Source: Ylistrum balloti (Eukaryota). From it: a stretch of DNA of 64,000 bases. The first letter of the stretch is position 1; every line of letters starts with the position of its first letter. A model generated the notes under the pieces. The model was not told the DNA's origin, did no database searches, and worked only from the letters and a program-made list of their open reading frames with translations. Of this stretch, positions 5,460 through 58,400 are shown piece by piece. The DNA is taken from assembly GCF_031769215.1 (NCBI RefSeq), contig NW_026782025.1, positions 124,001-188,000 of the forward strand, written 5' to 3'. Made by a program: the position numbers and the translations under genes.

Positions 5460-6090
5460 GTCATATATCCTTTATACTCTTAATATTTGTGAATGATATC
5501 ACTGATATCTTTTGAAAGAAATGCGATGTCTAACNNNNNNNNNNNNNNNNNNNNNNNNNNNNNNNNNNNNNNNNNNNNNNNNNNNNNNNNNNNNNNNNNN
5601 NNNNNNNNNNNNNNNNNNNNNNNNNNNNNNNNNNNNNNNNNNNNNNNNNNNNNNNNNNNNNNNNNNNNNNNNNNNNNNNNNNNNNNNNNNNNNNNNNNNN
5701 NNNNNNNNNNNNNNNNNNNNNNNNNNNNNNNNNNNNNNNNNNNNNNNNNNNNNNNNNNNNNNNNNNNNNNNNNNNNNNNNNNNNNNNNNNNNNNNNNNNN
5801 NNNNNNNNNNNNNNNNNNNNNNNNNNNNNNNNNNNNNNNNNNNNNNNNNNNNNNNNNNNNNNNNNNNNNNNNNNNNNNNNNNNNNNNNNNNNNNNNNNNN
5901 NNNNNNNNNNNNNNNNNNNNNNNNNNNNNNNNNNNNNNNNNNNNNNNNNNNNNTTTGTTATTATATCATACTGTCTGCCACCTTGTAAATATAATGTGTG
6001 TATTAATATGTTTGGAAACGGCTTTATATAAGCTGTAAAACTTGTGCCCAATCCTATTTCAACTGATGTGCAATAAAGTATGTTTAAATC
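5460..6090 (+). mobile_element. LINE fragment spanning the gap (RT motif before the gap, family 3' tail after it)
   Basis: Before the gap one frame reads LLIFVNDITDIF (compare LFLIYINDIADV in the 10.4-13.6 kb LINE). After the gap, AAGCTGTAAAACTTGTGCCCAATCC...GCAATAAAGTATGTTTAAATC matches the LINE tail AAGTTGTAATAACTTGTGCCCAATTCC...GCAATAAAATATGTTTAAACT. Confidence 0.6.
5535..5953. other. Assembly gap (419 N)
   Basis: Run of N directly visible. Confidence 1.
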
Positions 6091-38093: not shown

Positions 38094-41000
38094 TTATAAC
38101 AGAACACAGAACCTGGTAGATTGAATGGTTGGTGAGTGATCTGGCTTGGCAGCTTTTATATCATTTGCTTGCTTATTTTTCTCTACAGCATGAGAAATAG
38201 CGGCGGAAAATTTCGTCATATCGCCCTCCCATACTGAAGATGACAACTGTGAGATCTCGCGCACGGCAAGAACCTGAAAAAAGTGGTTAAAAAGACGTTA
38301 AAAACGGTTAGCAAAAAATATGACAATAAAAAACAAGATCTAAACAATAATTTTTTTATACAGAGATGGACCTGGAAATAATTTTTTAGTCTCTCTCTCT
38401 CTCTCTCTCCCTCTCTCTCTCTCCCTGTCTCTCTCTTTCTCTCTCTCTCTCCTTTACATGAGGATAACTTTCCGTTACCTGTTCTGGCGACCATGTGCTG
38501 TTGACCCTATTCTCGTCTTCCATGAACCTCGCAACACTAGCAGATAGCACTGTCGCTGAAATACAAGATGCCACTTTCAATGCCGTTTCTTCGTCGAATC
38601 CCGTTACCGCCCCCTTATGTGACGGTGATACTTTATGTTTAATTGGCAACACATGTTTACGTCTTTTCTTTCTCGATGCCAACTTGGTCTGATGTAGTGA
38701 CGTTGTTACTACCGTCTCCTGTGTAACTGGATCAGTCTTGTTAGGACTTTTCTTAGTTTCTGTGTTTTTGTTTTCAATATCCCAGCTCACTTTACAAGTC
38801 TGAAATTAAGACAAGTACCTATCTGAAGTTCATAATGGTAAATATTTACATGCATAGACTAGAAACTTGAAGATAAAACAAGGCTTATTTTTTTTAATTG
38901 ACAGAAACCGGAAGTCCATATTTGCAACCAGACTTGTAATCGAGGTTGACGTTCGACGTATTGTATGCAGTAAACAACCCCCTATATATACCCCTATGTA
39001 TAATGTATTTATTTGCAATGTGATGAGAATTGGCAGGGACGAATTACAAACAATATAGAAGTGATATCATGTACAGGTAACCTTTTCAAGCACAGTTTAT
39101 AAACAATATTAGAAAATACAGATTAATTTTTAGAAAAGTTTTTTACGAGTTTAGTTTCTGGGGTATTTGCACAAGTATGCATTCAAAGCTGATAAAAGAA
39201 CGAACGAAGAACGAATAAATCTACGTGAAGACTTACACAGGCAAAAACGGGTTGGTTAGTAGTATTTGGTTATTTTCAATGTTTTTGGAGTTGACGAACA
39301 TGAAGATGTATAAACGTAGTCTTAAACCCGTAATTATTGTATTGATACACAATGGAAACGTTTTAGAAGTTCTGGGAAATATAGATTCTTTATAGACTAA
39401 TACACATAAAAAATATTTTTGCGATAATCGACAGAATATTGCCGAATTATGGAAAGATATCATACAGAGGTTTCACCATATCATGTTCCTTCCTTGATGT
39501 TAGAGGTAAAAGTAAACCCTGAAGGAATGTTATAAACACCCAAAATGACTTCGAAAACTGAAACCTTGAAAACGTGGCTTGCAATATATATTCATGTCAT
39601 CCAAACTTATGTCAAACTAGGGTGCTACAAAATTCCTGAGCAGAGCTAACCTCTCACCTATCTTAAGTTTGTACCATAGACAACTTTTTTATCTTCATGT
39701 TTCAGATATACATCATTAGAAAAATACTCTTCATCGATTTCAATTATTTATCAAGTGATATCCCGATTTCGTTTTGCTAAACCTGTAATGTCAATTGACG
39801 AAGCAGCAAATGAGGGAAAGATATGTTGAACCTTCCTTAATAACAAACAAGTGGAGGGTGTACTCTTTTTGAGGGGGTTGTAACATTATTCTTTGTTTTG
39901 CTTTTGTTTTGTTTAAGTTTGGTTAAATTTGGGATTTTCTTTCTAAGTTTTGCAATATAATGTCCCTGAGTCAATGAAACAATTAAAATATCAAATGTCC
40001 TGTATTTTCTTTTCTTTTTCAATTTCTTTCGCATTTAATAAAATCTGTTAATCGATATACAACAAATTCGAACTCTTCAAATCCTTTCTCGTGTGTCTTA
40101 TTGTACAAAACAAATTACATACATGGCAACTCGATTTGATAACTGGAAACTTTTATCAATTTTTAAAATTTGCACGCAGTGTTCTTCTAGTAGACACATG
40201 ATGGAACGTACCTTCTTTGTGGTTTTTCGAGGAATGTTCTCAGTTGATATAGTACCTGGTCGTGTATTAGAATCGGGCGGATACAGCAATTCCGGCGACA
40301 GTGTTTGGAGCACATCATTCCGGTTCGCCATAAGAAACGCAAGCCATGTCTCGAATGACGTCACAGAGTTGTCCACTAAAATATATTAAAGAAAGCGAAG
40401 AAGACATTTACCTCAAGTCATTCACCAGTAACCAAAATTTAAAATTCGGCAACGTTTTTAAAATTCCAGCCCGAAAACAAAACACATAAACAAAACCAAT
40501 AAAAACAACATATTTTTGTATTAATCAATTACATGACAAGGAACCATGCCTCTAACGCCTATATGTGTATGCTTAGTGCTGCCGCTGTATATGCATCTTC
40601 ACTACTTCGTCAAATAAAAGAACCATTGCAGACACTGCAATGGATTTAGCACATTTTTCTTTCACGAATCACAAAACCAATATCAATTAAAATTGTTTAA
40701 ACTGTGTAAATGCAGAATGATTGATTATGAAATTAGTTTTTGTCTTTTCATTAAAACATATACACATATCGTACAAAAGAAAATATATCAATTGATAAAT
40801 ACTTATTAAAACATTATTAAAAAACGCCACATCGTTTCCTTGTATTTTGACCCCATGTCAGTTATAACTTCCGTTCCAATCGAGTCACTGAATAGACGAC
40901 AGTGCCGGTTTTAATCATCTGTTAATTTTTTCCATTTCTATATGTACTAGCATAGAAAGAAATAAAAACAAACTAACAATCGACTTGAACTAATATACAT

Positions 41001-44000
41001 TCTGTTAAATGTTGAGTTTTAGTATATATATATTAATGATAAATATAGAATTCTATAAAGTATACGTTAAAACCTGAAACATAAGATTTTATAAATTTGA
41101 TAAATCAAGTATATGTCAGAAGTCCATATGGTATATATCCTATGATTATTGAATGCAGTACATTTACTTTTAAGAATGTGTCCAAACATGAATTGCGAGT
41201 TCTAATTTATGAGTTATTTTGTTTTAACTGTGATAAATTATATATCGACCAAAAAAATAACGAACTCAGAATAAGTCTGTTCATTAGTTAATTATATAAT
41301 ATATTGTACTAGTTATATCCATGATTGTGCTGGTGACATATTTAATTTCATATGGTTATATATCAGTAAAGATTAGCTGATAAAAAATCTTCAACAAAGA
41401 CTCAACAGGCTAGATGAAAATTGTGCATGTTCTGTTTCTAGTATCACATGTCACATCAATTATGACGTAATCAAATGGTTGTTTAAAAATAAACACGATG
41501 AGTCTATTGAAGGATGTAAACCGCTAGTTCAAGACGGTTGTTAATGTGTCCTTATTTCTACATTTCCCTACTTACCATGGATCTGTAACATATATTCCTT
41601 TACTACTATATATGGATCGTTACCTTTGAATGGGATGAGCCATTTGGACGACATGGACTCGGTTTGTGATAGCTGTTTTGATACTAGCTGGTCAATCTTA
41701 AGACGACGGTCTGTAACGGATTTTCTAAATACCTCATCGAAATTCGGGTCTCCCCTGAAACTCAGGTACTTCTAAAAATAACAATAAACGATGCAAAATA
41801 ACGATAAGAAGTTAGAGTGTTCGAATCTCGATGTTATACATGGTATTTGTCACTCATTTGAGAACAGGGCATTATCTGGATTAAACTAATTTACATAACA
41901 GAAGACAAATTATATATAAGATGCATTGATCTTATTTTCAAAATGTTGTCAAATGTATCCTTGTAAAACTTTCCTTTGCTAACATTCTGACCTCGTTTAG
42001 TCAATTTTCAATAACGATTTTCTTCAAATGTCGTAATTTTAACTTATTGTTACATATTTCGTACTGAACTCTCTTACATATATGTGAATCTGGAATATCT
42101 GTGTCTTTCCTAACACATGCTCATAGAAATACCCATTTAAAGTATACTTTGAGCATACTTTACCTCTGTAACTAGTCCTGGCAACGAGGCTAAAAAATTC
42201 AGCAGATGGACAAGACATGGTGCCACGGTCATCCACAGAACCTGTGTGGCAGTCTTCAAGTCGGAGTAGGAATCCGTCACTACGCGAGCTATGAATTGCA
42301 GTTCCTTCGTAAATCCTTTCACGTTAATCCTTACCTATTTCAACAATAGATAAAACATGGAATTTCCTGTTAAATCTGAAAGAAGATCCTATATTCAAGA
42401 TAAAAATTATAATGACGGAGATTAAGATAACGAATATAGGCAACTAAAATTTGATAACATAGAAGGACCAGGTATAAAACCCAATTACTTCTTGTGGTAG
42501 GTTCCACTATATCGAGAGTAAATACCTTGATTGGAAGAAACTAAATAAAAATAAGCGAAAGAGAAAAGTTACAATGCTTAACTGGTTTACTACCGGTACA
42601 AATAGGTAATTTCATCCTCTTTAATCTTCTTGAATATTCTTATTTTGGTGTGTTGCATTTCTCTCACTTGTTACAAACTTTTGCGCTCTACCGAAATTTA
42701 AATCTAAATTGGAAATTGGAAGACATTAAGATATTTCTTATTTTTTTTCTGGATTACATTAAACTAAAACAAATGAAAATAAACCAGCATTAACACCAAT
42801 AATACAAATGTAATTGCAACAGATTAAAAAACAGATATATTTTGAAATTTGAAAAATGAAAAATAATGGATATTCAACCAGGAGTTGAAATTTTTTGATT
42901 TCTTCAAGACAAACTCGCAATTCATATTAGACTTGGCATAATACTGCTATCCAATAAGTACCACTGTACATTTCATATCCGTTTAGAAACCGATTTTAGG
43001 ATATTGTGCAAAACACACTCAAGCAAATAACACCTTTCAATTGGACTTAGTCAGTGATGCTAAGGGCCTAAATTTTGAACCTAGAGGGGACCTGAGGAAA
43101 AAACAAATTTGATCGAAAGGCATGTCAAAATCTAGATGAAAAAGTGAACTAGCCTCATAATTGAATATATTTCTTACTTTTCCTATATGTGGTATTTTCT
43201 ATTGACTATCTGAAGAGAGTGAAGAAATTTCAAACCATTACCTCCTTTCCGAGCTGTATGAGGACACCTTGTTGCCAGACATAGCTGTATTGTGTGAATG
43301 GTCTGGTCAAATTTAAGCACAAAGCTAGTATCCTAAGTACTATACCCAATGGTATGGCACATTTACAGCAGAAGTGGACCGAGATCTGGAAGTCTCCCTT
43401 GTGTGGGTTCTCTGACCAATGCAAGCTCTAAGGACATCATAAAGTGTCGCAAAACACATTGAATAGTGACCAGATTATGAAATTACATGGAAGTTTTATC
43501 ACAAAAACAATCGTATCTGTGAATCTACCAAACGCTTATTAAATTGCACTGCTCATAAAAATTAATCACTACTATACAAATGATGCCGTGATCTGTCATT
43601 GCAGATTGTTGTTTTTGAACATGATTTATTTGCAAAATAATAAAAAAAGAGTTTACGCCTAAAGATAAAAAATCTATTTACGTAACACTATGCAATTGTA
43701 AATATTTACGAAATACGCATTTAAAGAAAACATTAATTTCTGACTGGATGCATTTACATACCATAAAACATTATTTATAATACTGAAGACTTGATTTACC
43801 GGTTTAGTCTCCGGGAGTTTGTTCATAAGCATGATTTGTCGCATGCTTGTACCGGACAGATAAGTAAAGAACGGCATGTCCAGCTCTGGGGTCGGGTCAA
43901 TGGCCTGTCCTTGGGTGTTCGCGTGGCAGATTAGTCCAAGACTCTCCATCACACCCAATGCCAGTGTTATCTGGTCCATACGGATGTACGGCGTCTAGAA

Positions 44001-44224
44001 ACAGAATTTTAACAATGTGCTAATGTTTCATGCAATTTTATCAGTTTTTTTCTATAGAAACATATATGATTACAAAAAAAGAGAACATATTCTAGTTGAT
44101 TAATTTATATTTAATTCTCATAATTACCATACAAATGCTGAGAATCAATTCGTAAATTGATCTATGCGGCTAGGTAGAGAACTATAATGTATTAAAATAT
44201 ATAGGTATACATAAGATGATTTTG

Positions 44225-44264
<40 letters not shown>

Positions 44265-47200
44265 CCGTTTGGTAAATGATCAATTAAAAACAACCTACAT
44301 TCCATAGCAGAGGTAGAAAAGATTCAGGAACCATTCCGCTGGTCTGGAGATTTTCAAGCACTCCTGCAACGACGGTCGGATTCGGCGGTGTCCGGTTCAT
44401 GTTTGAAGGCCAGAACTTACCAGCCTCCAAGCGAAACACATGCCCTCCAGCGTCGAGATGGGACCGCAACATGAGGTTAGAAAAGGCAAGAGGGTCGACA
44501 CAAAAAACTGTGGTCGCCTCATCTTGCGTCGTGATGTGGAACTCTCGAACATAGTCCTAGCAAGTTAAGAAGATTTAATCAGGTATATTCGTACGGTTTG
44601 ATCGTAGGATCAATATCTATTTTAGGATCATATTTAAACAGATTGTCTCTGTTACACTCTGCTAGTGAATTATAATTCTTTTTCAATCCACGAATCAAAA
44701 GAAAACCATGTTCTAAAAATAGAAAGAAAGAAAAATAAATAAAATACCAGCATTTTGTTTTAACATTTTCAAAGACCTATCTTCAAGCAAAAAACCCTTT
44801 CAGTAATTTGTAGTTGGTATCATGAAAACGTAATACAATCGATATATGCAGTGATTTGTAGCTAAATCAAATCATTCTATAATGATGCGAAACGGTTACC
44901 TTCTTCAGCAGATAGTTCAAAGCTTGTTCAGTAAAGTTGCAATAAGAGTATGGTAATTGTTCTTTTGTCACAAAAATAAGATGTTCCTTGTTCTTTTTGT
45001 GGATATACTGAAAAGTCTGTAGGAGACGTGGTTTGATAGATAAGTCGTAACCAACGTCGGAACAGATCCAAGAGGCACATGCGAGGAGTGACTTTCTCAA
45101 CTGCTGGAGCATCTGGTAAGATATCACATTACTTTTTGTTTACATAAATGCGAAAAATGTTGACAGCTGTGATACCAGGCCAACCTAAATGTACATATAG
45201 TACGGAAAGTACCTTTTCAGGTTTATATGGTATTCTAAGTAAATCAGACTTGAATATTCAGAAATGAAAGATGCATAATGATAAGGAGACCATTAGTATC
45301 GGTTAATGAATTAGTTATGAATGAAATATATATACTTTTATATTTTACAGCAGTAAAATGTCGTCTATCACTCTGATCACTGAAAGTACAACGTCTAGAT
45401 CTGTGCCAAACATTTAGACTCGGCAACATAAAAATCGTTAAGCTTAGCTTTGTATTTAGCAACGCTGACGGTTTGCTTGGTTTCGTGCTTAGCAACACAA
45501 ACGTTTTGCTAAAGAGAAGAGGAAACGTAACATCATTCAAAAGATAAATGATAACATCTCGTGAAATATCAAGATCCCAATAAATATTTTAACACACCAT
45601 TTTAGTATAAGACAGTAGATATACACTGACGTCATCAACGTTTTACAACAGTATCGTTAATATCAATGAGCCTATTACATCCTACATGCATAAAAAAACT
45701 TACACCAGTGAAAATTTTTGTTATTTCTTATTTATGCAGAGTAAATAAAATTACAACACTATCAAAAAGATACTTTCAGGAAATTATACACCTGAAGTTG
45801 TCTGATAGCCACCAAAACGTCACATATAACAATTTATAATTTTTATTTAAGTATTTCAAGGCATGTTTGTTTTACTCACAACCATCAAAAATACATATAC
45901 TCAATTTATTTCATTTACCCAAATATCACTAAGAAAATTGGTTACATTTAGGTTGTTAAATATTATCTATAGAAGTGTAATGGAAGGGGTTCAAGTAAAC
46001 AACTACAGCAGAAAAAGAGTAAAAGAAAACAAGTACCTGAGTGTCAGTAGAGTTAAAAGGATGAACAAGTAACGAAAAGTTATTTTCTGTTATAGCTGGT
46101 TGCTTTGCTTCATCACCAGTTACTTCTTCACTTGAGGCTAATCTGTAAGATGGAGAACATGAAATGTTACTAAGGAGGGGATGGGTAGCATGATACCATA
46201 ATATAACTTCGGGTAGCAGTACATTGTATCAAGGTAACGGATTTGTCCCCTTGATGATATAAATGACATGTCATGTATCAATCATGTTGTGTCAAGCTAT
46301 CCTCAGACATGATTTTTTTTGTAGACAAGATTGTAGATATAAGCATGTTTTCCTCTATATTATAAATTTATATTCAACATGGTTTCTTCTTCTTCTTCTC
46401 CATCTACGTATCTCATAAAAATATTACTACAGGGTTTTCTCATCCTCATTATTATATACTTATGGCATTGAGTTGCACTTTTTATCCCACTGACATGATC
46501 AAAACCTGATCAGCGACATTACGTAGTAGTATTATACATTATTAACATATTACGAGAAGTGCAGGGTAATCCTCTGGTGTGCATACTCCTGGCTTAGCGC
46601 TATATCTCTACGTATCTTTTGACAGGTAAAACTGCCATGACAGTTCTTTCTGATAAACTATTTGAAGAAATATTTTCTTAGTAGTACCACAAAGTTATAC
46701 TTCTATGTCTGCTGGTAAAAATTCAGTAGCCTATTGCAAGGTCTGTTTTCTTGGTAGCAATCAAAGTATAACAGTGCGTGACAGTAATTCACTAACCTAT
46801 CACAGAACGTGTTCTCCTGAAAGTGATTAACTGACATATCTAAAAAGAAAAAAAGCATAGTCTTCTGACATCAATTCGCTAAACGATTATAGGACGTGTT
46901 TTCCTGAAAGTAATTTACTTTCCAATACGGGACGAATTCTTCTTGACAGTAATTCCACTTACAAATCGCAAAACATGTTCTGCTGGTAGCATTTCGCTGA
47001 CATTATACCAGACGCGTTCTCCTGTCAGTAATCCAATTACAAATGGCAGAACGTGATCTGCTGGTAGCATTTCTATGACTTTAAACAGGATGTGTTCTCC
47101 TGACAGTAATCCACTTATAAATGGCAGAACGTGATCTGCTGGTAGCATTTCTATGACTTTAAACAGGATGTGTTCTCCTGACAGTAATCCACTTATAAAT

Positions 47201-50200
47201 GGCAGAACGTGATCTGCTGGTAGCATTTCTATGACTTTAAACAGGATGTGTTCTCCTGACAGTAATCCACTTATAAATGGCAGAACGTGATCTGCTGGTA
47301 GCATTTCTATGACTTTAAACAGGATGTGTTCTCCTGACAGTAATCCACTTATAAATGGCAGAACGTGATCTGCTGGTAGCATTTCTATGACTTTAAACAG
47401 GATGTGTTCTCCTGACAGTAATCCACTTATAAATCGTAGAACGTGATTTGTTAGCAGCTTTTCCACGAACTTATACAGGACCGGTAACCTATAACAGAAC
47501 ATTTTCGTTTTGCAGTAATTTACCAACCTTTTACAGAACGTGCTTACCTGAAAGTAATGAACCAAGCTATCACCGAGCATGTTCTCCTGAAAATGATTAT
47601 TTAACCTAATATTTAACCTGCCTTTTTGGTCCCCTGACGGCATTTCACTTATACATCACGGGGCATTTATTACAGTACTCGATCTCCTGGCGTTAGTTCA
47701 CAGGGGGTGTACTTATGGGAGAAATTCACCAACCTACAAGTTCCCCTGGTAGTAATTTTATCACAGGACTTGTCTTCAGAGTAGTAATTCACTTACCTAT
47801 CACAGGATGTGTTTTCCTGGGAGTACTGGCCGACAACCTCGTTCCATCTATCCTTTATACGACGACAAATGTCACCGATGTTAATTTTTTGACACGAAGG
47901 TAAGTTAGTTTTGGTTAGTATTGCAATGATGTGTGGTTTGTGAATCTGAAAAAATAAGAATATTCAATATCAACAAAGAAATATTGATATCATTCTAAAT
48001 CAACTATTGAAAAACAACCTCTCAATGTTATGTAATTCTATGTCAACTAATCAATATTGTTATAATTTTGTATCAATCAATCAATATTATTATAATTCCA
48101 TACCAGTCAAACAATATCACTATAAGTTCATATCAACTAATCAATACTATATAATTTCAGGTCGACCAATCACTACTGCTGTCAGCATGCTTTAAATGGC
48201 CTTATTCAACATGTTTTCATTGAAGTTACTAGTGTTTTAGAAGCCTAAAAAAAGTATGTAAAATGTGGTTGGAAATTTATATCTGATGTGCAATAGTTCT
48301 AATTTTTCTAACTTAAAATGGGTTACACAGCCACCCTAACACTAACATACCGAGCAAGAAAATAGTTAAAGCATCTGAAATAAATAATATATTATCACTA
48401 AAAGAAGTGTCATAAATTATCAAATGTATTGTTAACGATACAAAAAGTAGCAGAAAATATATGACAGACCCATTAACAAATGAAAATCTAAGGGACACCG
48501 ACTTTGGGGGAAAAGCAAGGAAAAAAGACACAACAGATAATGAACAGAAAAAGTTTGATGTTTTACGATCAGGAGATGCGAAGTTTTGCTAGAGGTCATA
48601 TTAGATCGTCATGCTAATTTAAGTGTGATTTTTCCAAGACAGCTTCACTTACCTTATACATTATATACCTGCAGATGTCTAAGACTTCCACATCAGGATC
48701 CTGCGTGTCGGCTGTTACCAGAACGAGGTAGATTGCGGGTTCTGTCAGTAAGACGGGGTAGAGTGCTCGCAATAACTAAAGGAATAATGTAAAAAGAAGA
48801 CGTGTGTAAATCATAACTATGGAAATATATATAAAAAAAATCACCAATTGACTTAATGAAGCTCTTAAGGTTGACCTACCTGTCAAGATTTCTAATTTGA
48901 AATAATTGAAATCAGGCTATGATTTTACATCTTTTGAGAAAAGAAATGATAGGACATGAATTTAGACTCACCCGCCATACCGTAGGACTGAATAAGCTCT
49001 ACCACCAAAGAGAGATTACAGAATTGACTAATATTCATGCAAAACGCATTCCACCGAAATAATTTTACATCGATTATTATATAATTCTTGAAGAAGTATG
49101 CCAAACGATCGATTGAAACATAGCTCACTAAAACCATGGTGAGTTCCATGCAGGTATTGATTGTAATTGGTCAAAAGATCATTTACAATGCTTTAACTGC
49201 TCAATAAGCAGGAAGCAAAGGTCGTCCAGAAATTCAAATTTAAATTTTTGAAAAATATTTGCTATACTTTATTGTGAAGCAGTTTGTCTTTGTGTTTAAT
49301 ACAGTAGGTTATCAAATGTATTAACCATGTTAGTATTTAAATCTTAAAAATATAACTTATTTCATGCATTAAAGCACAATTAAATGTCGTCGATGGTAGC
49401 TACTCTGGTACAATACAGAAAAGAATGAGTCTGTGAAAAGGGTACAATATAACACGATAAACAATTATATTTTCTTCTGTTTTGTTAATTGTAACCGATT
49501 TCATGATGTGACCTGAAAGTGGTTTCGTCTTGAAATAGAAGAACTGGATCAATAGGTCATCAGCTATATATAGTTAAGTCATTAATGCCATTAGTGATTG
49601 TTCTGTTTTAATTGGTATTACATCGATGTTTCCACCATGACACGCCACAGGGAGTCGTGCAATGCTGTGAAATAGACACATGAAATGATTAGATCAACCC
49701 ATTCCTTACAGGACTGGTTATCAATGCGACGACCTTATTAGACTTAAAAAATAAACACTGACATATTGGACAGGTCCGTACATACTTTACTACCTGGAAG
49801 TTCCCACATGTCCATGTGAAGCTCTGCACCCAATCTCTCCTCTGTAAACAAAACACGACACGTTCAATATCACATATTTGCTTATCTGCTCACATAACGT
49901 TTGAGAAAAGCTAAATCTAGGTTAAAATAGGATGTTAAACAACCGGTAGCAAACATACAATGTGCAAACCAGGCAGAGAGGCTGGGAAATCTTATACCAC
50001 AAGATGTCGACGCCCATGGGGGTATTGACATATCTTCGTTAATTAGTTTTTGTATCATCATAAGATCATATAGCATGTGGGCATCAGATTCTAACAAACC
50101 ACAGAGGTCAGACGACAAATACACAACAGATCCGTCTCACCTTTGGAGGTATCTGTGAAGAGTCGGCCTGTGTACACAGAAATGTCCCCACGATCTGATG

Positions 50201-53070
50201 GTGCATTCATTTGATCAAGGAGGAGGTTGATGACAGTGGTCTTGCCGTGCCCACGTCCTCCCATCACGTAAACACGAGTCCTGATAAAGTTAATCGAGAA
50301 CATATACACATTCTTCTGATAAATAAAGTCTTCAATAAAACTTTAAATTGCCTTTTCCAATTATTCATATCCTGCCTTATAAAATTGTTAATGAACTCAG
50401 CATTTAATGAGGATTTGGCTCAACATCCGGCATACCACATTTAACATTCAGAAATAGAATCAACACACCAAACTGGAATGTTTTGCAATTCGACATACGA
50501 CATTCAACACGTTGTATTTGAATGATGTACAAGTGAATATTCACATAGACGCCTATCCAAACAGATGAAATAATACTTAAAAGTATATTTTATTTAGATG
50601 GTAAATATTCTTCTCTTACCGTCTTCAACCATTCTAATCAGAACGAACTGAACGTCATGTTTCGATTGATTTATCAAAGAATGAATTTAATCATGATAAA
50701 GGATTTCTTTTAATTTAAAACGTCAAATTTTATTTTTTTTCCATTTAAAATATCTATATAGCATGCTGTTATGACATTAAATACATATAAGACTCGTATG
50801 TAAACGTGGTACAATAAAACTCGAAAATAAGACACGTTTTATTTTCTTTGTTAGTAACAAATACAGGCTGATCAAAGTAGGGAACTATATGTTTATTTTC
50901 ATTGTACGCTTATATTGACATCGGTCTTTCCGAGTACTTATGGAATTATATTACAGACAACAACAGCTTTTAGTTTGTAATTTCCATATAACAGACCCAT
51001 GTTATAATGAACTCGTTTTTTCAGACTTCAGTTATTTTGTTGTTGTATTATACCCTGTTTACATATGTAAATTTCATAAAATTGTTTTATATCATAAACA
51101 CTTGGTATTTGTTAACTTATATATTATCAATAAATCGTGGTAATTTGGTATAATCTGTACCTTTTGCAATCTTCTACTTCCATCATTACAGAGTAAGATG
51201 ACGAAAATCACTCCTGATATAACTCACATATCGTTGTAGTAACAGAGAGAACTAATAGAACACTTCCGTATACACTCACTGTTACAGTTATGTCAGAGAA
51301 GTATATGTGTTTTAACAACGGTGATTTAATAATAAACCGATAGTACACAGTGGAATATTTGATCTGTTCTTTTGTTCATACTTTGAGTGATCAAAAATAT
51401 CTTATTCAGTTGAACATTGCGTGGCATAGTAAACTTATAAAGTCAGTACCAAAGACAAGTGTCGTAAATTGCCTTAAAGGTAAGATCAACGCACACATCA
51501 AAGCGTCTACCTCAGATCCAAACGACCATTCATGATTTCAGACATTGTCATTATCAAATGATCTGAACACATCTTTGTTAGTTAAATTGCGTACATATTC
51601 TGTTCTTTGGCAGTGTGATCCCCGCATAGTAATAACAAACCCCGTGTTAACACTACTCCTACCAATACAAACGAATGGTTGCACTGACAATAACACTGTT
51701 CCTCGTAATTTGATACCATGGTTACGCTGACTGTCCCTCGTAATTTGATACCATGGTTACACTGACAATAACACTGTTCCTCGTAATTCGATACCATGGT
51801 TACACTGACAATAACACTGTTCCTCGTAATTTGATACCATGGTTACACTGACAATAACACTGTTCCTCGTAATTTGATACCATGGTTACACTGACAATAA
51901 CACTGTTCCTCGTAATTTGATACCATGGTTACACTGACAATAACACTGTTCCTCGTAATTTGATACCATGGTTACACTGACAATAACACTGTTCCTCGTA
52001 ATTTGATACCATGGTTACACTGACAATAACACTGTTCCTCGTAATTTGATACCATGGTTACACTGACAATAACACTGTTCCTCGTAATTTGATACCATGG
52101 TTACACTGACAATAACACTGTTCCTCGTAATTTGATACCATGGTTACACTGACAATAACACTGTTCCTCGTAATTTGATACCATGGTTACACTGACAATA
52201 ACACTGTCCCTCGTAATTTGATATCATGGTTAAATGGACTATAACGAGGTTATATCAACAATAAATATGCTTATCGTAGGTATTTTCCGTGATGCCATTG
52301 TGAAAAACATTGTTCCATGGTTACACTGACAAAAACATTGTTCCATGGTTACACTGACAAAAACATTGTTCCATGGTTATTCAGTGACAAAGTCACTGTG
52401 TCGTGGTAACACTGACCAAATCATTTTGTGGTGGTAACATTGCCAAAATCACTGTGCCGTGGTAACATTGCCAAAATCACTGTGCCGTGGTAACACTGAC
52501 AAAACACTTTTCCATGGTTTCAATCATTGTTTTCATCCATTGTTGTATACTGATTCCGGTAATTTGAAATGATGGTTACTCAGCTTCCTGCCAGGTCGAT
52601 GGCACCATACACTTGCAAACAATTGCCTTCAAATACAATGCAAACAGAACAGTCTGTTTCTTACCCTCCGGTCAAAACCGGTTTTAGTCTACTGATAGAT
52701 TTCTTAACTCAATTGATAATCCTGGAAACCTCTTACATGATTTGTGACCTATAACTCAACTTCGGCTCAGTTGACGACAGTAGCACCAAGCTACGTGCTT
52801 GTCTGTCAAGCCCAATATTCGAAAGGGGCATTGCACGAAACTGCGTATTGACGTGAATGCACCGGATTACACAGTGCTTCTGTCCAGTGCTAAGTGGCAC
52901 ATCACACCACTGTTAGACTGTAATATCCTCTTATCATTTATCAAATGATTACGCACCTGTCCCTTCACAATATCGACGCAATCGATTGGCAGATCACGGG
53001 CCCGGACAGACAATGTCTTTGACCACGTCACGCAATGACTAATTAAATCTCGGTGCACCTGTTCCATCAT
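38094..53070 (-). CDS. Roc-COR (Roco-type) P-loop protein with C-terminal CaaL motif, about 910 aa
   Basis: complement join(52957-53070,52749-52909,50141-50280,49786-49841,48653-48775,47797-47945,46037-46142,44900-45112,44299-44556,43800-43994,43242-43427,42164-42334,41576-41771,40212-40375,38479-38799,38094-38273) = 2733 nt, all GT-AG, phase-consistent, no internal stop. Roc-like: RVYVMGGRGHGKTTVINLL, MDMWELPG, LYPVLLTEPAIYLVLV, PHIIAILTKTN, MLQQLRKSLL. COR-like: TVFCVDPLAFSNLM, GMVPESFLPLLW, LGVMESLGLIC, IPLGIVLRILALC, YVWQQGVLI, LASLPGL. The first exon and true N-terminus are uncertain. Confidence 0.8.
38390..38452. repeat. Imperfect (CT)n microsatellite in the last intron of the Roco gene
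   Basis: Directly visible. Confidence 0.95.
44226..44264. repeat. Poly-T tract
   Basis: Directly visible, about 38 T. Confidence 0.9.
46720..47830. repeat. 39-bp minisatellite with homogenised 78-bp higher-order dimer (5 identical copies, 47047-47436)
   Basis: CAGAACGTGATCTGCTGG at 47047, 47125, 47203, 47281 and 47359. Each 78-mer is two diverged 39-mers; degenerate 39-mers flank both sides. Confidence 0.95.
48042..48175. repeat. Degenerate approximately 30-bp tandem repeat, 4-5 copies
   Basis: Reiterated TCAACTAATCAATATTGTTATAATTTTGTA-like units. Confidence 0.7.
51682..52232. repeat. 43-bp tandem repeat, about 12-13 copies
   Basis: Unit TTACACTGACAATAACACTGTTCCTCGTAATTTGATACCATGG; CCATGG spaced 43 bp apart (e.g. 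51794, 51837). Confidence 0.97.
52300..52520. repeat. 28-bp tandem repeat related to the 43-bp unit
   Basis: AAAAACATTGTTCCATGGTTACACTGAC repeats, followed by diverged GTGGTAACATTGCCAAAATCACTGTGCC copies. Confidence 0.85.
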
Positions 53071-55496: not shown

Positions 55497-58400
55497 TTAG
55501 TTACGACAAACTAGAACGGGACAACTGGCATGATGAATCACGTGATCGCTGACACTGCCGAGGAATGTTCGCCGGACTTTCCCGAGTCCTCGAGTCCCAG
55601 TTACTATGCAACCTGCTCCCACACGTTGTGCTACATCAACAATGACATGGCCTGGCTTCTGTGAGTATTCAACCTTAAACTCTGCCTGTATCTGTAATAG
55701 AAACCAATTGTATTTATCGCCGACGAACACCTCTGATATCACAATAGATTCAAAGCTTACTATGTATGCGCCATCTTGTGATTATCAAACTATGACTAGA
55801 CTGTAGACTTATGAAGGTATAAGATATTTGAATATAACGTTAAAATTATCAGTTTTGATATAAAATTATTTTTTATTTAATGATAGGCTCGATAATTAGT
55901 GTTCAACACAGTTTTCAATTTTTTGATATTACATATTTCAAAGGTATATCATTTTCTAGACAAAAAGTTAAGGATTATGATTTTTTCTGTCATTAAATGA
56001 ATAGAGCTTGACATTCATTGACCACTGTTTTATCACAAACGTATGCACAATAACTTTTCAGTAATGATTTGCCAACCCACAGTTAACGTGCGGCAAGACA
56101 TCTTGTAGCACAGGGTTAAAATCAAAATATCAATTGTTGTTTTATTGTCTTTGTAGACTAAACGTCAAATCAATCGACAACTTTAGTGTTTCTTCTGAAT
56201 GTCCTGTCATTTTGCATCCTGTTTTGAACGTCTGTTTGCATGATACGTCACATGACAGGTGCAGAGGCTGGCCGAGCAGTCGGAATGCTTAACGCAGGAT
56301 AATCACGACGAACTCTAGCTGCATTCTTCAGTGTCGATTGTGGCATCGATTGCAGATGACCGGAAACGTCACCGAGAGACCTTGATCGTTATTTGACCAT
56401 GTAAACATGAGACTGCTTTAGTGGCGGCCTATACACTTTTACTGATGAGCCCAGGTTTTGGTTGGACTTTCATGATGACAGGAGGCATGTTTGTCGTGGG
56501 TAGGGAGAGAGTTGTATGTGTGTTGATTGCTGTGTCACTGAGCATGACCGTTTTGTTGGGACCTCGGTAATGAATATGGTAACAAAGATCAGTTTTGAAA
56601 ATTGGCCTAACCTTTCACGTTACCTTCACCGGATCAAGCCTGCGCGGGACATGTAACATCAACTTATTACGCGGCATCCTGCCAACCGACAGGTGCTTGC
56701 TGATTGTCTTCGTCAAGAATGGTAACGAATTCCACAAATTGCCATACGGCGCCTGATTCGCAGCCGATGCTTAGCCGATGTCGTGCTTTTATTGGGGCCA
56801 GTGGAGGACATACTCACTATTGATATTGTGCTGAACTAAGTATTTTGGATTTTCAACGCCATTTGGATTTACTTATTTCAGAATGTTATGAGCTTTTTCT
56901 GTAATCGTACATGACACGCTTGAATGAAATTACTTCAAAGTGGATAATTTTTTTTTCTTGTTGTTTGACTTGCATTGCATATTCCAAAGGTATTTGTCTT
57001 TTGATACAAATAAATCTATATTTAAAAAGTGATTTCCTAAATGTGCCCAGTATATGATATGAAAAGTGGTCACGGAATTTAAAAGGCGCTTGAAACAAAC
57101 GTATATACGGGTATTAAAACTCGAAGGAAACATATGTATAGAAGAATTTAAGCTATTTAATTATTATGTGTTCCTTACAATTTATCGTAAGTTTGGTTAC
57201 ACATCGATGTTGAAAACATGACTTGGAATCGCCATAAAGAAACTTACCCCAGCGGCCGAGGCTTTGGCTAACCATTTGTCATGTAGAGCTTGGGTGTTTT
57301 CACTTACTTCTCTCTGTAGTTGCGTTACCCGACCAGGACCTGCAGTCAGTTATAGATGAATTACTAAAGCATTTCCGACTGTTTTGATGGGTAAGCCGTA
57401 CAATTCGTTATATCAAACAATACAGTCATCGGGTTAAATTAGGATAATAATCCAGTTGTTGGAAAATATTAAGAAATAAACTGTTACAATATATAAACCA
57501 CAATTACGAAATGTTATATATTATATTTTACATCGTAATTATATTCCATTCATTCGCTTGTATCTTTTGAACAATCTGTAGTCGGTATTTCACTGCTTAC
57601 AAGTAGGCTGTATATTTCATTCGTGCTTGGAAACAAGACCTTTCGTAACGGTCTAGACCTTAACTTGAAATAGATGAAATGAAAGCCAAAAATAGAATAC
57701 AATTTTGTTTTTACGTTTCATGAGACTGTTGAATATGTGTAAGAAAAAGCGAAGAACAAAAGGGGAGTATATTTGCTCTCGCAAACGACTTCCGTTATCA
57801 TTAAGCTACACCCGTTGAAGCCCTGTAACATTTTAACGCAGTGGTCGGCATTGGTTTCAGAAACTGTTTTGCATAAAAATCATTGTTTCATAACGAATCA
57901 GTAATATGATTAAATATCGTTAAAGGAATCAGAATACACTATCAGAGAACTTAATGATATGTATTTTGAAATCATCATCTTATCTTTTGCATTAGTAGAA
58001 ATCCAACACTGTTGGTTGGGCTGTTAAGGACAGATCGCGGGATTTAATTATATCTAATAATAACGTTGTTACAATATCAACGTCACATGTCAGCTTGTGA
58101 TGATTATTTGTCTGCAAACCTGTACCGGCCATAAATCGATGCTTATATTTACAAATTACTGACAATGAAACGCAAATGTAAATATGTCTTTTTATTTCCA
58201 TGCTTGACACCGTCAATCACACATAGCCTAGTCTGCTGATGTGGCTTTATATCGTAGGTGTAATAAGTAAATCTTTCAAACATATGATTCTTATATGTCC
58301 TAGTATTCGGAACTCCGGAATGGCTGGTATTCCAAGGGAGATTTCAATCATTAACAATTGAGTATTGTTAGGCTGTTTCATCTAATGCAGTTACAAAGGC

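What the first reader, a model, noticed from the sequence alone, without database searches (positions are those of the whole stretch)
47797..50280. Roc domain keeps the P-loop but has altered G2, G3 and G4: pseudo-GTPase or switched nucleotide specificity
G1 is intact (GGRGHGKT). The switch I region reads PSDRGDISV, with no Thr where Roc has ST.GI. G3 is WELPG instead of WDFxG (DxxG to ExxG). G4 is TKTN instead of [N/T][K/H]xD. The G4 Asp-to-Asn change is the same substitution that shifts Ras (D119N) and EF-Tu (D138N) from guanine toward xanthine nucleotides. A natural version with three coordinated changes suggests loss of guanine specificity, ATP binding, or a catalytically dead scaffold. 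The motif register is my manual alignment.
Basis: partly seen in the sequence, partly recalled or inferred. Interest (0 to 1): 0.7.

Follow-up and report, generated by a model that had tools for sequence, protein, structure and literature searches.

The report
Scallop Roc GTPase with altered motifs
A single-copy gene found only in scallops encodes a LRRK2-type (Roc) GTPase domain. It keeps its phosphate-binding loop, carries Glu in place of the near-universal switch II Asp, and usually has Asn in place of the guanine-reading Asp. It evolves under strong constraint, so it is an unusual but working variant rather than a dead relic; its nucleotide chemistry is untested.

Summary
On the minus strand, four short exons (window 50280-47797) of an 18-coding-exon gene encode GGRGHGKTT, PSDRGDISV, WELPG and LTKTN. 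The gene is Ylistrum balloti LOC132546528 (810 aa). My splice model equals the NCBI protein.

- **Family.** The domain has a Ras-like fold and its best sequence matches are Roc: LRRK2 Roc in PDB and ROCO paralogs in the same genome. All Pfam scores are below threshold.
- **Orthologs.** They exist only in scallops. Glu in G3 is invariant in all four species.
- **G4.** It is Asn in Ylistrum, Pecten and Mizuhopecten but canonical Asp in Argopecten. On the published species tree that looks like a reversion.
- **Background.** About 60 other G domains in this genome all have Asp at G3.
- **Selection.** dN/dS of the G core is 0.08-0.14. Phosphate/Mg-site residues are more conserved than background (p = 0.003); base-contact residues are not.
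- **G2.** This is weak evidence. Switch I is variable in Roco proteins, and a Ser/Thr is conserved one residue away.

Most likely the domain still binds nucleotide but with relaxed guanine selectivity, on a prenylated Roc-COR-like scaffold. Pseudo-GTPase status or switched specificity is untested.

The scan noted this same stretch twice (s1-262868). I found no note of it on other DNA.

The parts
51161..51183 (-). Coding exon 1 (MEVEDCK plus 2 bases of R8); donor gt at 51160
   Evidence: Exact mapping of P0001 onto the window; sequence read; the N-terminus is conserved in Pecten, Mizuhopecten and Argopecten
50141..50280 (-). Coding exon 2: beta1, G1 P-loop GGRGHGKTT (50261-50235), alpha1, switch I PSDRGD, beta2 ISVYTGRLF
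49786..49841 (-). Coding exon 3: beta3 and G3 WELPG (49806-49792; E68 codon GAA at 49803-49801)
   Evidence: The alternative donor at 49794 does not keep the reading frame.
48653..48775 (-). Coding exon 4: switch II helix, beta4, alpha3 (LLRALYPVLLTEPAIYLVLV...)
   Evidence: aligns with the LRRK2 switch II region and beta4
47797..47945 (-). Coding exon 5: beta5, G4 LTKTN (TKTN 47915-47904; N128 codon AAC at 47906-47904), alpha4
   Evidence: the X1 contig differs only at 47907, a synonymous change
46037..46142 (-). Coding exon 6: end of the variable alpha4-beta6 insert, beta6, G5-like FNST (about 46057-46046)
   Evidence: HPFN..D.Q is invariant in four species and sits after beta6, where LRRK2 has VNAT.
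40212..45112 (-). Coding exons 7-14: COR-A-like and COR-B-like region (residues 200-645)
   Evidence: Exon mapping. ESM Atlas features score 0.94 and structure TM is 0.59-0.68 to COR-A/COR-B-bearing clusters. There is no Pfam COR hit and hhalign is not significant.
38097..38799 (-). Last coding exons: disordered Lys/Ser/Thr-rich linker, helical tail, CaaL box CVLL (38108-38097)
   Evidence: The box is conserved as CAIL, CVVL and CTIL in the orthologs.

Best explanation
The stretch encodes the G domain of a scallop-specific, single-copy ROCO-type protein (Ylistrum balloti LOC132546528, 810 aa). The architecture is Roc domain, COR-like region, disordered linker, short helical tail, and a CaaL box that predicts geranylgeranylation. 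The Roc domain is functional and non-canonical. It keeps the phosphate/Mg2+ machinery: P-loop GGRG[HY]GKTT, and a carboxylate at the DxxG position that is Glu instead of Asp. The guanine-specific contacts are relaxed: G4 is TKxN in three genera and TKxD in one, and G5 varies as N[SA][TS]. I infer that it still binds a purine nucleotide through the P-loop, with weak affinity and reduced guanine selectivity. I also infer that it acts as a slow-cycling or nearly constitutive membrane-anchored switch or scaffold whose state is relayed to the COR-like region through the invariant switch II segment. Shown here: gene model, fold, motif register, conservation pattern, purifying selection. Inferred: nucleotide binding, selectivity, hydrolysis rate, prenylation.
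For: - **Gene model.** The hand-built model equals the NCBI protein. The gene is single copy in the genome.
- **Fold.** Ras-like: AlphaFold2 pLDDT 80.6 with strand order b1-a1-b2-b3-a2-b4-a3-b5-a4-b6-a5. The two best Foldseek hits are LRRK2, followed by Arf, Rab and Rho.
- **Roc kinship.** Roc is the best Pfam family at 18.5 and 20.7 bits. The 16 best PDB profile hits are all LRRK2, best E = 6e-4. hhalign against same-genome ROCO paralogs gives E = 2.7e-5. ESM Atlas neighbours are Roc/COR clusters.
- **Constraint.** dN/dS of the G core is 0.075-0.144, similar to the COR-B-like region at 0.086-0.102.
- **Site-specific conservation.** Phosphate/Mg-site positions are 10/11 invariant against 79/174 for the rest of the domain (Fisher p = 0.003). 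Base-contact positions are 3/6 invariant.
- **G3 Glu.** Invariant in four genera. Glu at the Walker B/G3 position is compatible with GTPase activity in the G3E family (PMC2770081).
- **G4 Asp to Asn.** This change removes guanine specificity in Ras, and changes in G4 and G5 re-specified the SpoIVA and Era NTPases (PMC7952092).
- **Affinity context.** Roco proteins already bind nucleotide only with micromolar affinity, and their G4-G5 motifs are known to vary (PMC6337361).
Against: - No biochemical data exist and no RNA run was available to show expression.
- Only four orthologs are known, so the conservation statistics are thin, and a Gly-rich P-loop could be conserved for structural reasons.
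- dS is near or above saturation (0.9-2.8), so the dN/dS values are approximate.
- No Thr sits at the aligned G2 position. In the AlphaFold model T45 lies inside beta2. So Mg2+/gamma-phosphate sensing may truly be impaired.
- An Arg at the Ras-G12-equivalent position (R17) and the lack of a Gln or Arg after G3 suggest poor intrinsic hydrolysis.
- The COR assignment rests on ESM Atlas similarity only. Pfam and hhalign do not support it.
Confidence: 0.5

Rival explanations
1. It is an ordinary, fully competent Roc GTPase. Glu for Asp at G3 and Asn for Asp at G4 are tolerated substitutions that do not change nucleotide preference or cycling in any important way.
For: The P-loop is intact, T-K of G4 is kept, and G5 N-S-T resembles LRRK2 N-A-T. 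Purifying selection is strong. The Argopecten ortholog has canonical TKTD. The G3E GTPases work with Glu. G4-G5 variation is known in Roco proteins.
Against: DxxG is described as the most conserved region of Roco proteins (PMC6337361). None of about 60 G domains in this genome has Glu there. Asp to Asn at G4 abolishes guanine specificity in Ras, and starting from micromolar affinity that should matter.
Confidence: 0.22
2. It is a class i pseudoGTPase: a G-fold module that no longer binds any nucleotide and serves only as a structural or interaction domain of the Roc-COR scaffold.
For: There are simultaneous deviations at G3 and G4, no Thr at the aligned G2 position, and no catalytic Gln/Arg after G3. 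Class i pseudoGTPases with a normal fold are known (PMC12490416).
Against: Known nucleotide-free pseudoGTPases lack conserved G-motif residues, for example AAGAB. Here GxxxxGKT-T is invariant and the phosphate-site residues are more conserved than the rest of the domain (p = 0.003). The carboxylate at G3 and the Lys of G4 are kept.
Confidence: 0.15
3. Nucleotide specificity has truly switched: the domain prefers ATP, or xanthine/other purine nucleotides, over GTP.
For: G4 Asp to Asn is the classic XTP-switch substitution. SpoIVA shows that a TRAFAC GTPase can become an ATPase through G4/G5 changes. Base-contact positions are not specially constrained.
Against: XTP is not an abundant cellular nucleotide (general knowledge). 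The G4 Lys and the LRRK2-like G5 are retained, whereas SpoIVA also lost the Lys. One ortholog carries Asp, so a fixed new specificity is not conserved.
Confidence: 0.08
4. It is a mis-annotated or decaying gene fragment, and the odd motifs reflect relaxed selection.
For: No RNA evidence could be obtained. Pfam scores are below threshold. The Argopecten ortholog lacks the exons for residues 200-421.
Against: There are 18 open exons with conserved exon boundaries in three genomes. dN/dS is about 0.1-0.17 over the whole protein. The exons are identical in a second individual. The CaaL box is conserved in four genera.
Confidence: 0.03

Closest known systems
Roc domain of ROCO proteins (LRRK2, MFHAS1, DAPK1, bacterial CtRoco)
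   Same: It has a Ras-like G domain with a GxxxxGKT P-loop and a T-K start of G4, as in T[HK]xD. Its G5 N-[SA]-[TS] resembles LRRK2 N-A-T. The hydrophobic switch II/beta4 block (YP..LTEPA.YLV) aligns with LRRK2 HPHFMTQRALYLAV. A region follows that looks like COR-A/COR-B by ESM Atlas features and structure.
   Different: It has Glu instead of Asp in DxxG, and Asn instead of Asp in G4 in three of four genera. There is a roughly 30-residue variable insert between alpha4 and beta6. It has no LRR, ankyrin, kinase or death domain. It has a C-terminal CaaL box. Pfam Roc, COR-A and COR-B are all below threshold. It is restricted to Pectinidae as far as the searches reach.
Engineered XTP-switch mutants (Ras D119N, EF-Tu D138N, Ypt1 and Ran equivalents)
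   Same: The same Asp-to-Asn substitution at the last position of [NT]KxD (PMC7952092; PMC2120555 and PMC2120845, listed).
   Different: Those are laboratory mutants of high-affinity GTPases. Here the Asn is natural, apparently ancestral for scallops, sits in a family with micromolar affinity, and is combined with Glu at G3.
G3E family of SIMIBI GTPases (HypB, UreG, MeaB, CobW/COG0523)
   Same: Glu replaces Asp in the Walker B/G3 motif, and members are still active GTPases (PMC2770081).
   Different: They belong to an unrelated class (SIMIBI, not the Ras-like TRAFAC class), are metallochaperones, and have an intact NKxD. The similarity is convergent at one residue only.
PseudoGTPases (class i such as AAGAB, CENP-M and p190RhoGAP pG domains; nucleotide-binding but inactive such as Rnd and RhoH)
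   Same: A G fold with departures from the consensus G motifs, and probably poor catalysis.
   Different: Class i members lack the P-loop consensus, while this protein keeps it. No biochemical test exists here.
SpoIVA (ATPase derived from an Era-like TRAFAC GTPase)
   Same: A natural change of G4/G5 base-contact residues that alters nucleotide preference.
   Different: SpoIVA lost both the Lys and the Asp of NKxD and gained SxE in G5. The scallop protein keeps the Lys.

Membership tests
Ras-like small GTPase superfamily (TRAFAC) | Six-stranded G fold in the order b1-a1-b2-b3-a2-b4-a3-b5-a4-b6-a5 | tested here: met
   AlphaFold2 model of residues 1-222 has pLDDT 80.6 and pTM 0.79 with exactly this order. 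At least 500 Foldseek PDB hits have E <= 0.001; the 50 best listed are all G-domain proteins, nearly all small GTPases.
ROCO family (Roc domain) | Match to Pfam Roc PF08477 at the gathering threshold (27 bits) | tested here: not met
   18.5 bits for Ylistrum and 20.7 bits for Argopecten. Roc is the best-scoring family, but below the cut-off. The window gave no hit in the genome-wide PF08477 search.
ROCO family (Roc domain) | Closest sequence relatives are Roc domains | tested here: met
   In the profile search of PDB the 16 best hits are all LRRK2, with E from 6e-4 for the isolated Roc-domain chains to 0.09 for the long chains. hhalign against four same-genome ROCO paralogs gives probability 74.6% and E = 2.7e-5 over 117 columns. 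The evidence is modest but consistent.
ROCO family (Roc domain) | G1 P-loop GxxxxGK[ST] | tested here: met
   GGRGHGKT at 50261-50238, invariant except H/Y at position 19 in four species.
ROCO family (Roc domain) | G3 DxxG, described as the most conserved region of Roco proteins | tested here: not met
   WE[LV]PG in all four scallop orthologs. Asp is present in every G3 motif seen in about 60 other G domains of this genome, including 11 ROCO-type WDF[AG]G motifs.
ROCO family (Roc domain) | G4 [NT][KH]xD | tested here: not met
   TKTN in Ylistrum, TKAN in Pecten, TKTN in Mizuhopecten. Met only in Argopecten, which has TKTD.
ROCO family (Roc-COR tandem) | COR domain directly C-terminal of Roc | tested here: inconclusive
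   There is no Pfam COR-A or COR-B hit on the protein or its exon pieces, none in the window in genome-wide searches, and hhalign is not significant. ESM Atlas features score 0.94, and the ten structural-neighbour rows (TM 0.54-0.68 over 311-376 residues) are nearly all Roc- and/or COR-bearing clusters. COR often escapes profile detection in other ROCO sets (PMC11378527).
ROCO family | GTP binding and hydrolysis by Roc | not testable with these tools
   This needs purified protein.
PseudoGTPase | Demonstrated lack of nucleotide binding and/or hydrolysis | not testable with these tools
   Only sequence-level indications are available: G3 Glu, G4 Asn, no Gln/Arg after G3, Arg at the Ras-G12 position.
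Prenylated (CaaX) proteins | C-terminal Cys-aliphatic-aliphatic-X, with X = Leu for geranylgeranyltransferase I | tested here: met
   CVLL, CAIL, CVVL and CTIL at the extreme C-terminus in the four species. Modification itself was not tested.

The most novel reading that the evidence does not exclude
This would be the first natural ROCO switch that has given up guanine specificity. An ancestral scallop Roc domain with a Glu-type switch II and an Asn-type G4 would bind ATP or any purine NTP (or sense nucleotide pools differently). Argopecten would carry a natural Asn-to-Asp revertant, giving a ready-made orthologous pair for dissecting how Roc domains read the base.
Probability: 0.15. Interest if true: 0.65.

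Novelty: new variant of a known kind. Interest (0 to 1): 0.4.

Why it matters
Roc domains are studied intensively because of LRRK2 and Parkinson's disease, and their switch II DxxG is regarded as the most conserved part of the family.

This protein is a naturally occurring, selectively maintained Roc domain with ExxG. Its G4 toggles between Asn and Asp among orthologs. That offers a natural experiment on two questions:
- How much guanine specificity and Mg2+ geometry does a Roc-COR module actually need?
- Can ROCO proteins act as nucleotide-insensitive or differently tuned scaffolds?

It also adds a minimal, probably lipid-anchored Roc-COR architecture to the molluscan ROCO repertoire. The practical impact is limited until binding and hydrolysis are measured. 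Atypical G domains are not rare, and this one is confined to scallops.

Tried and rejected
- **Plus-strand ORF.** None exists; all three frames are closed.
- **IRG/dynamin-type GTPase.** I considered this because of DLPG-like ELPG and TKxD-like TKTN. I rejected it because the sequence and fold matches are to Roc/LRRK2 and small GTPases, not dynamin or IRG.
- **Degenerate ABC ATPase.** Exon 2 alone hits ABC-F proteins weakly (E about 0.01), and the later exons can be threaded on signature/Walker B/H-loop spacing. I rejected this because the Walker A to 'signature' distance is about 45 residues too short, the full domain folds as a Ras-like G domain, and the profile hits LRRK2.
- **First coding exon at 53070 (MMEQ...).** This is suggested by the extent of another note. 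It is not used by the NCBI model. The conserved first exon is at 51183.
- **Alternative donor CCAG|gtagta at 49794.** It breaks the reading frame with the next exon.
- **G5 as ENTSCD (residues 158-163).** MAFFT placed it there. I rejected it because it lies in a low-confidence loop before beta6 and is not conserved in Argopecten. FN[SA][TS] after beta6 is the G5 equivalent.
- **T45 as the switch I Thr.** This is unlikely, since T45 lies inside beta2 in the model.
- **Full-length AlphaFold2 with 4 sequences.** It gave pLDDT 35 and was not used.
- **Searches that found nothing beyond scallops.** These were: exon pieces against the own genome (self only), the whole protein and its profile against 5.8 billion proteins (4 scallop proteins only), residues 1-200 alone (nothing), and the representative search with exon 2 (only P0001 and P0002 are true hits; the others are unrelated repeat proteins).
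- **RNA evidence.** No RNA run holds either part of the gene that I searched. This is not evidence of silence.
- **C-terminal helical tail.** No informative neighbour was found.
- **Mizuhopecten DNA.** It is not on record, so that species is missing from the dN/dS analysis.
- **Spliced protein.** I did not type it into any tool. All whole-protein work used the database copy P0001.
Full report
**What is at the coordinates**

The window is AT-rich eukaryotic DNA (about 35% GC) from a 648-Mb assembly. The plus strand of 47797-50280 is closed in all three frames. The motifs lie on the minus strand in short open segments. Reading the minus strand, I placed four exons:
- 50280-50141: carries TRVYVMGGRGHGKTT... 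and PSDRGDISVYTGRLFTDTSK; donor gtgaga.
- 49841-49786: carries ...MDMWELPGSK; donor AAA|gtatgt. The alternative donor at 49794 does not keep the frame.
- 48775-48653: carries LLRALYPVLLTEPAIYLVLV...; donor AAG|gtaagt.
- 47945-47797: carries IHKPHIIAILTKTNL...; donor AG|gtaagt.

A search of 1.84 billion representative proteins with the P-loop exon returned an 810-aa protein, P0001, identical over that exon. Its sequence is exactly my splice model. It maps without mismatch onto 18 coding exons from 51183 to 38097. It is NCBI 'uncharacterized protein LOC132546528' of the saucer scallop Ylistrum balloti. Contigs of an independent run from another individual (25 substitutions in 2.7 kb, nearly all intronic) carry the same exons with one synonymous change in codon T127. 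So the Glu and Asn codons are not assembly errors.

**What kind of domain it is**

Single exon pieces gave only generic P-loop hits. With the whole protein:
- Roc (PF08477) is the best Pfam family but below threshold: 18.5 bits here, 20.7 bits in the Argopecten ortholog, against a cut-off of 27.
- A profile of the scallop orthologs searched against all PDB sequences returns LRRK2 for its 16 best hits, with a best E of 6e-4.
- Profile-profile comparison with four intronless ROCO paralogs of the same genome aligns residues 7-129 with their Roc domains (E = 2.7e-5, probability 74.6%).
- An AlphaFold2 model of residues 1-222, built with a 17-sequence alignment, has pLDDT 80.6 and the exact Ras-fold order of strands and helices.
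- Its best Foldseek hits are two LRRK2 entries, then Arf, Rab and Rho GTPases.
- ESM Atlas neighbours of residues 1-200 are Ras/Roc clusters.
- For residues 195-640 they are COR-A/COR-B clusters by features (0.94) and, by structure, mostly Roc- and/or COR-bearing clusters such as MFHAS1-, DAPK- and ROCO-type proteins (TM 0.54-0.68).

Pfam COR models and hhalign do not detect COR here. That also happens in most brown-algal ROCO proteins (PMC11378527).

I therefore read the protein as Roc plus a COR-like region, a disordered linker, a helical tail and a CaaL box (CVLL). The Roc assignment has good support. The COR assignment is a supported lead.

**Register of the motifs**

Three independent alignments and the model's secondary structure agree:
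- G1 is residues 15-22.
- E68 sits at the Asp of DxxG, at the end of beta3.
- T125-K126-T127-N128 sit at [NT][KH]xD, after beta5.
- G5 is N194-S-T after beta6, matching LRRK2 N-A-T. The ENTSCD segment that MAFFT aligned to SAK is not G5.

D65, three residues upstream of E68, corresponds to Ras D54 and points to the other face of the strand. It cannot stand in for the missing Asp. No canonical DxxG or xKxD exists elsewhere in the domain.

For G2, HMMER aligns Y44 with the LRRK2 switch I Thr and puts T45 one residue later. In the model both lie inside beta2, and the loop before it reads PS(D/N)RGD. No Thr is at the expected place, but position 36 is Ser, Ser, Thr and Ser in the four species. Switch I is highly variable in Roco proteins (PMC6337361). 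So G2 carries little weight either way.

**Orthologs and polarity**

Sequence searches find relatives only in scallops:
- Pecten maximus (829 aa).
- Mizuhopecten yessoensis (811 aa in GenBank; the RefSeq model lacks the G domain).
- Argopecten irradians (588 aa).

There is no paralog in the own genome.

Across the four species, G1 is GGRG[HY]GKTT and G3 is WE[LV]PG. G4 is TKTN, TKAN and TKTN in three species and TKTD in Argopecten. The codons are AAC, AAC and GAC in the three species with DNA.

On the mitogenome tree (Mizuhopecten, (Ylistrum, (Argopecten, Pecten))) (PMC11354973), parsimony makes Asn ancestral for scallops. The canonical Asp of Argopecten would then be a secondary A-to-G reversion. 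The alternative is three parallel losses.

In about 60 other G domains of this genome that match the Roc profile, every G3 motif seen has Asp and none has Glu. These include 11 ROCO-type WDF[AG]G sequences. Every G4 motif seen ends in Asp. The Glu is thus specific to this gene and lies in what a Roco review calls the most conserved region of the family.

**Selection**

| Region | dN/dS (Nei-Gojobori, Ylistrum/Pecten/Argopecten pairs) |
|---|---|
| G core | 0.075-0.144 |
| alpha4-beta6 insert | 0.22-0.24 |
| COR-B-like region | 0.086-0.102 |
| Whole protein | 0.11-0.17 |

dS is 0.9-2.8, so they are approximate.

Within the G domain, the 11 phosphate/Mg-site positions (P-loop, E68, G71) are 10/11 invariant against 79/174 elsewhere (one-sided Fisher p = 0.003). 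The six base-contact positions of G4 and G5 are 3/6 invariant, the same as background.

This pattern fits a domain that must still hold phosphates and Mg2+ but is not held to guanine-specific contacts. It argues against a decaying or purely vestigial domain.

**Mechanism**

From established knowledge:
- The DxxG Asp holds the Mg2+-bound water. Glu at this Walker B position works in the active G3E GTPases (PMC2770081).
- The G4 Asp reads the guanine N1/N2. Changing it to Asn abolishes guanine specificity in Ras. G4/G5 changes turned an Era-like GTPase into the ATPase SpoIVA (PMC7952092).
- Roco proteins bind nucleotides only with micromolar affinity, so a further loss at the base site should matter.

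My best reading (confidence about 0.5) is a nucleotide-binding Roc with weakened guanine selectivity and probably slow hydrolysis. Two features point to slow hydrolysis: Arg at the Ras-G12 position, and Ser/Gly where Ras has Gln61. I read the protein as a lipid-anchored switch or scaffold through its invariant switch II block and the COR-like region.

Rivals:
- An ordinary GTPase (0.22).
- A nucleotide-free class i pseudoGTPase (0.15). The invariant GKT-T counts against this; compare AAGAB.
- A true ATP or XTP preference (0.08).
- An annotation artefact or pseudogene (0.03).

None can be settled without protein chemistry. No RNA run was available.

**Verdict**

However, G2 is uninformative, one ortholog has a canonical G4, and the domain is clearly under constraint. 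It is a new variant of a known kind (ROCO), confined to scallops, of moderate interest. The Asn/Asp ortholog pair makes the question cheaply testable.

The N run at 5535-5953 was not touched.

Noticed in passing
window 46720-47830 (TRF array 46944-47447, period 78, 6.4 copies): The intron after the G4 exon holds a minisatellite. Its translated units (..NHFQENTFCDRLVNY....NYFQENTSYNRL..) resemble the end of that exon (QYSQENTSCDR|gtaagt). This agrees with the scan's note that the satellite monomer derives from the exon/5' splice-site junction.
   Followed up: partly
L016 (Argopecten irradians locus, 61 kb): The Argopecten ortholog lacks the exons for residues 200-421 (the COR-A-like part). tblastn with the Ylistrum or Pecten segment gives no hit at E <= 1 in the whole locus, while flanking segments hit at 1e-13 to 1e-37. 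The locus also has a 28-kb intron inside the G domain. This is the one species with canonical TKTD.
   Followed up: partly
P0009 versus P0010 (Mizuhopecten yessoensis): The RefSeq model XP_021351000.1 (657 aa) lacks the whole G domain. The GenBank model OWF51630.1 (811 aa) of the same gene includes it. The RefSeq model is probably a truncated annotation.
   Followed up: partly
window 38097-38108 and the ortholog C-termini: A CaaL box (CVLL, CAIL, CVVL, CTIL) is conserved in all four scallops and is preceded by the invariant block HSP.I.ST.F. It predicts geranylgeranylation of a stand-alone Roc-COR-like protein, as another note of the scan proposed.
   Followed up: partly
window 51675-52232 and 52303-52518: Two tandem arrays lie just upstream of the first coding exon (51183), on the gene's 5' side: 43 bp x 13 copies at 95% matches, and 28 bp x 7.7 copies.
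   Followed up: no
window 55500-55781, minus strand: An open segment ends ...[33 protein letters not shown]. It reads like the C-terminal exon of a universal stress protein (Usp) family gene, upstream of the ROCO gene on the same strand. This is my reading of the motif; no tool was run on it.
   Followed up: no
window 38390-38451: A (TC)31 / (GA)n microsatellite lies in the last intron next to the exon that ends at 38476. It reads as ERERER in frame, so it could be mistaken for coding sequence.
   Followed up: no
P0001 residue 17 (window about 50255-50253): An Arg occupies the Ras-Gly12-equivalent position of the P-loop (GGRGHGKT) and is invariant in the four scallops. ROCO paralogs of the genome have Ala, Ser, Thr or His there.
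   Followed up: partly
G000 genome-wide: The genome has at least 39 COR-A and 8 COR-B profile hits, including several intronless ROCO genes of about 900-1130 aa (C202, C226, C150, C1209). It also has a set of near-identical 323-356-aa open frames with partial COR-A matches. Together these indicate a moderate lineage-specific ROCO expansion.
   Followed up: partly
L016:7776-7802: An exact 9-residue copy of the start of the switch II exon (LLKSLYPVL) lies about 500 bp upstream of the real exon in Argopecten. It may be a partial exon duplicate.
   Followed up: no
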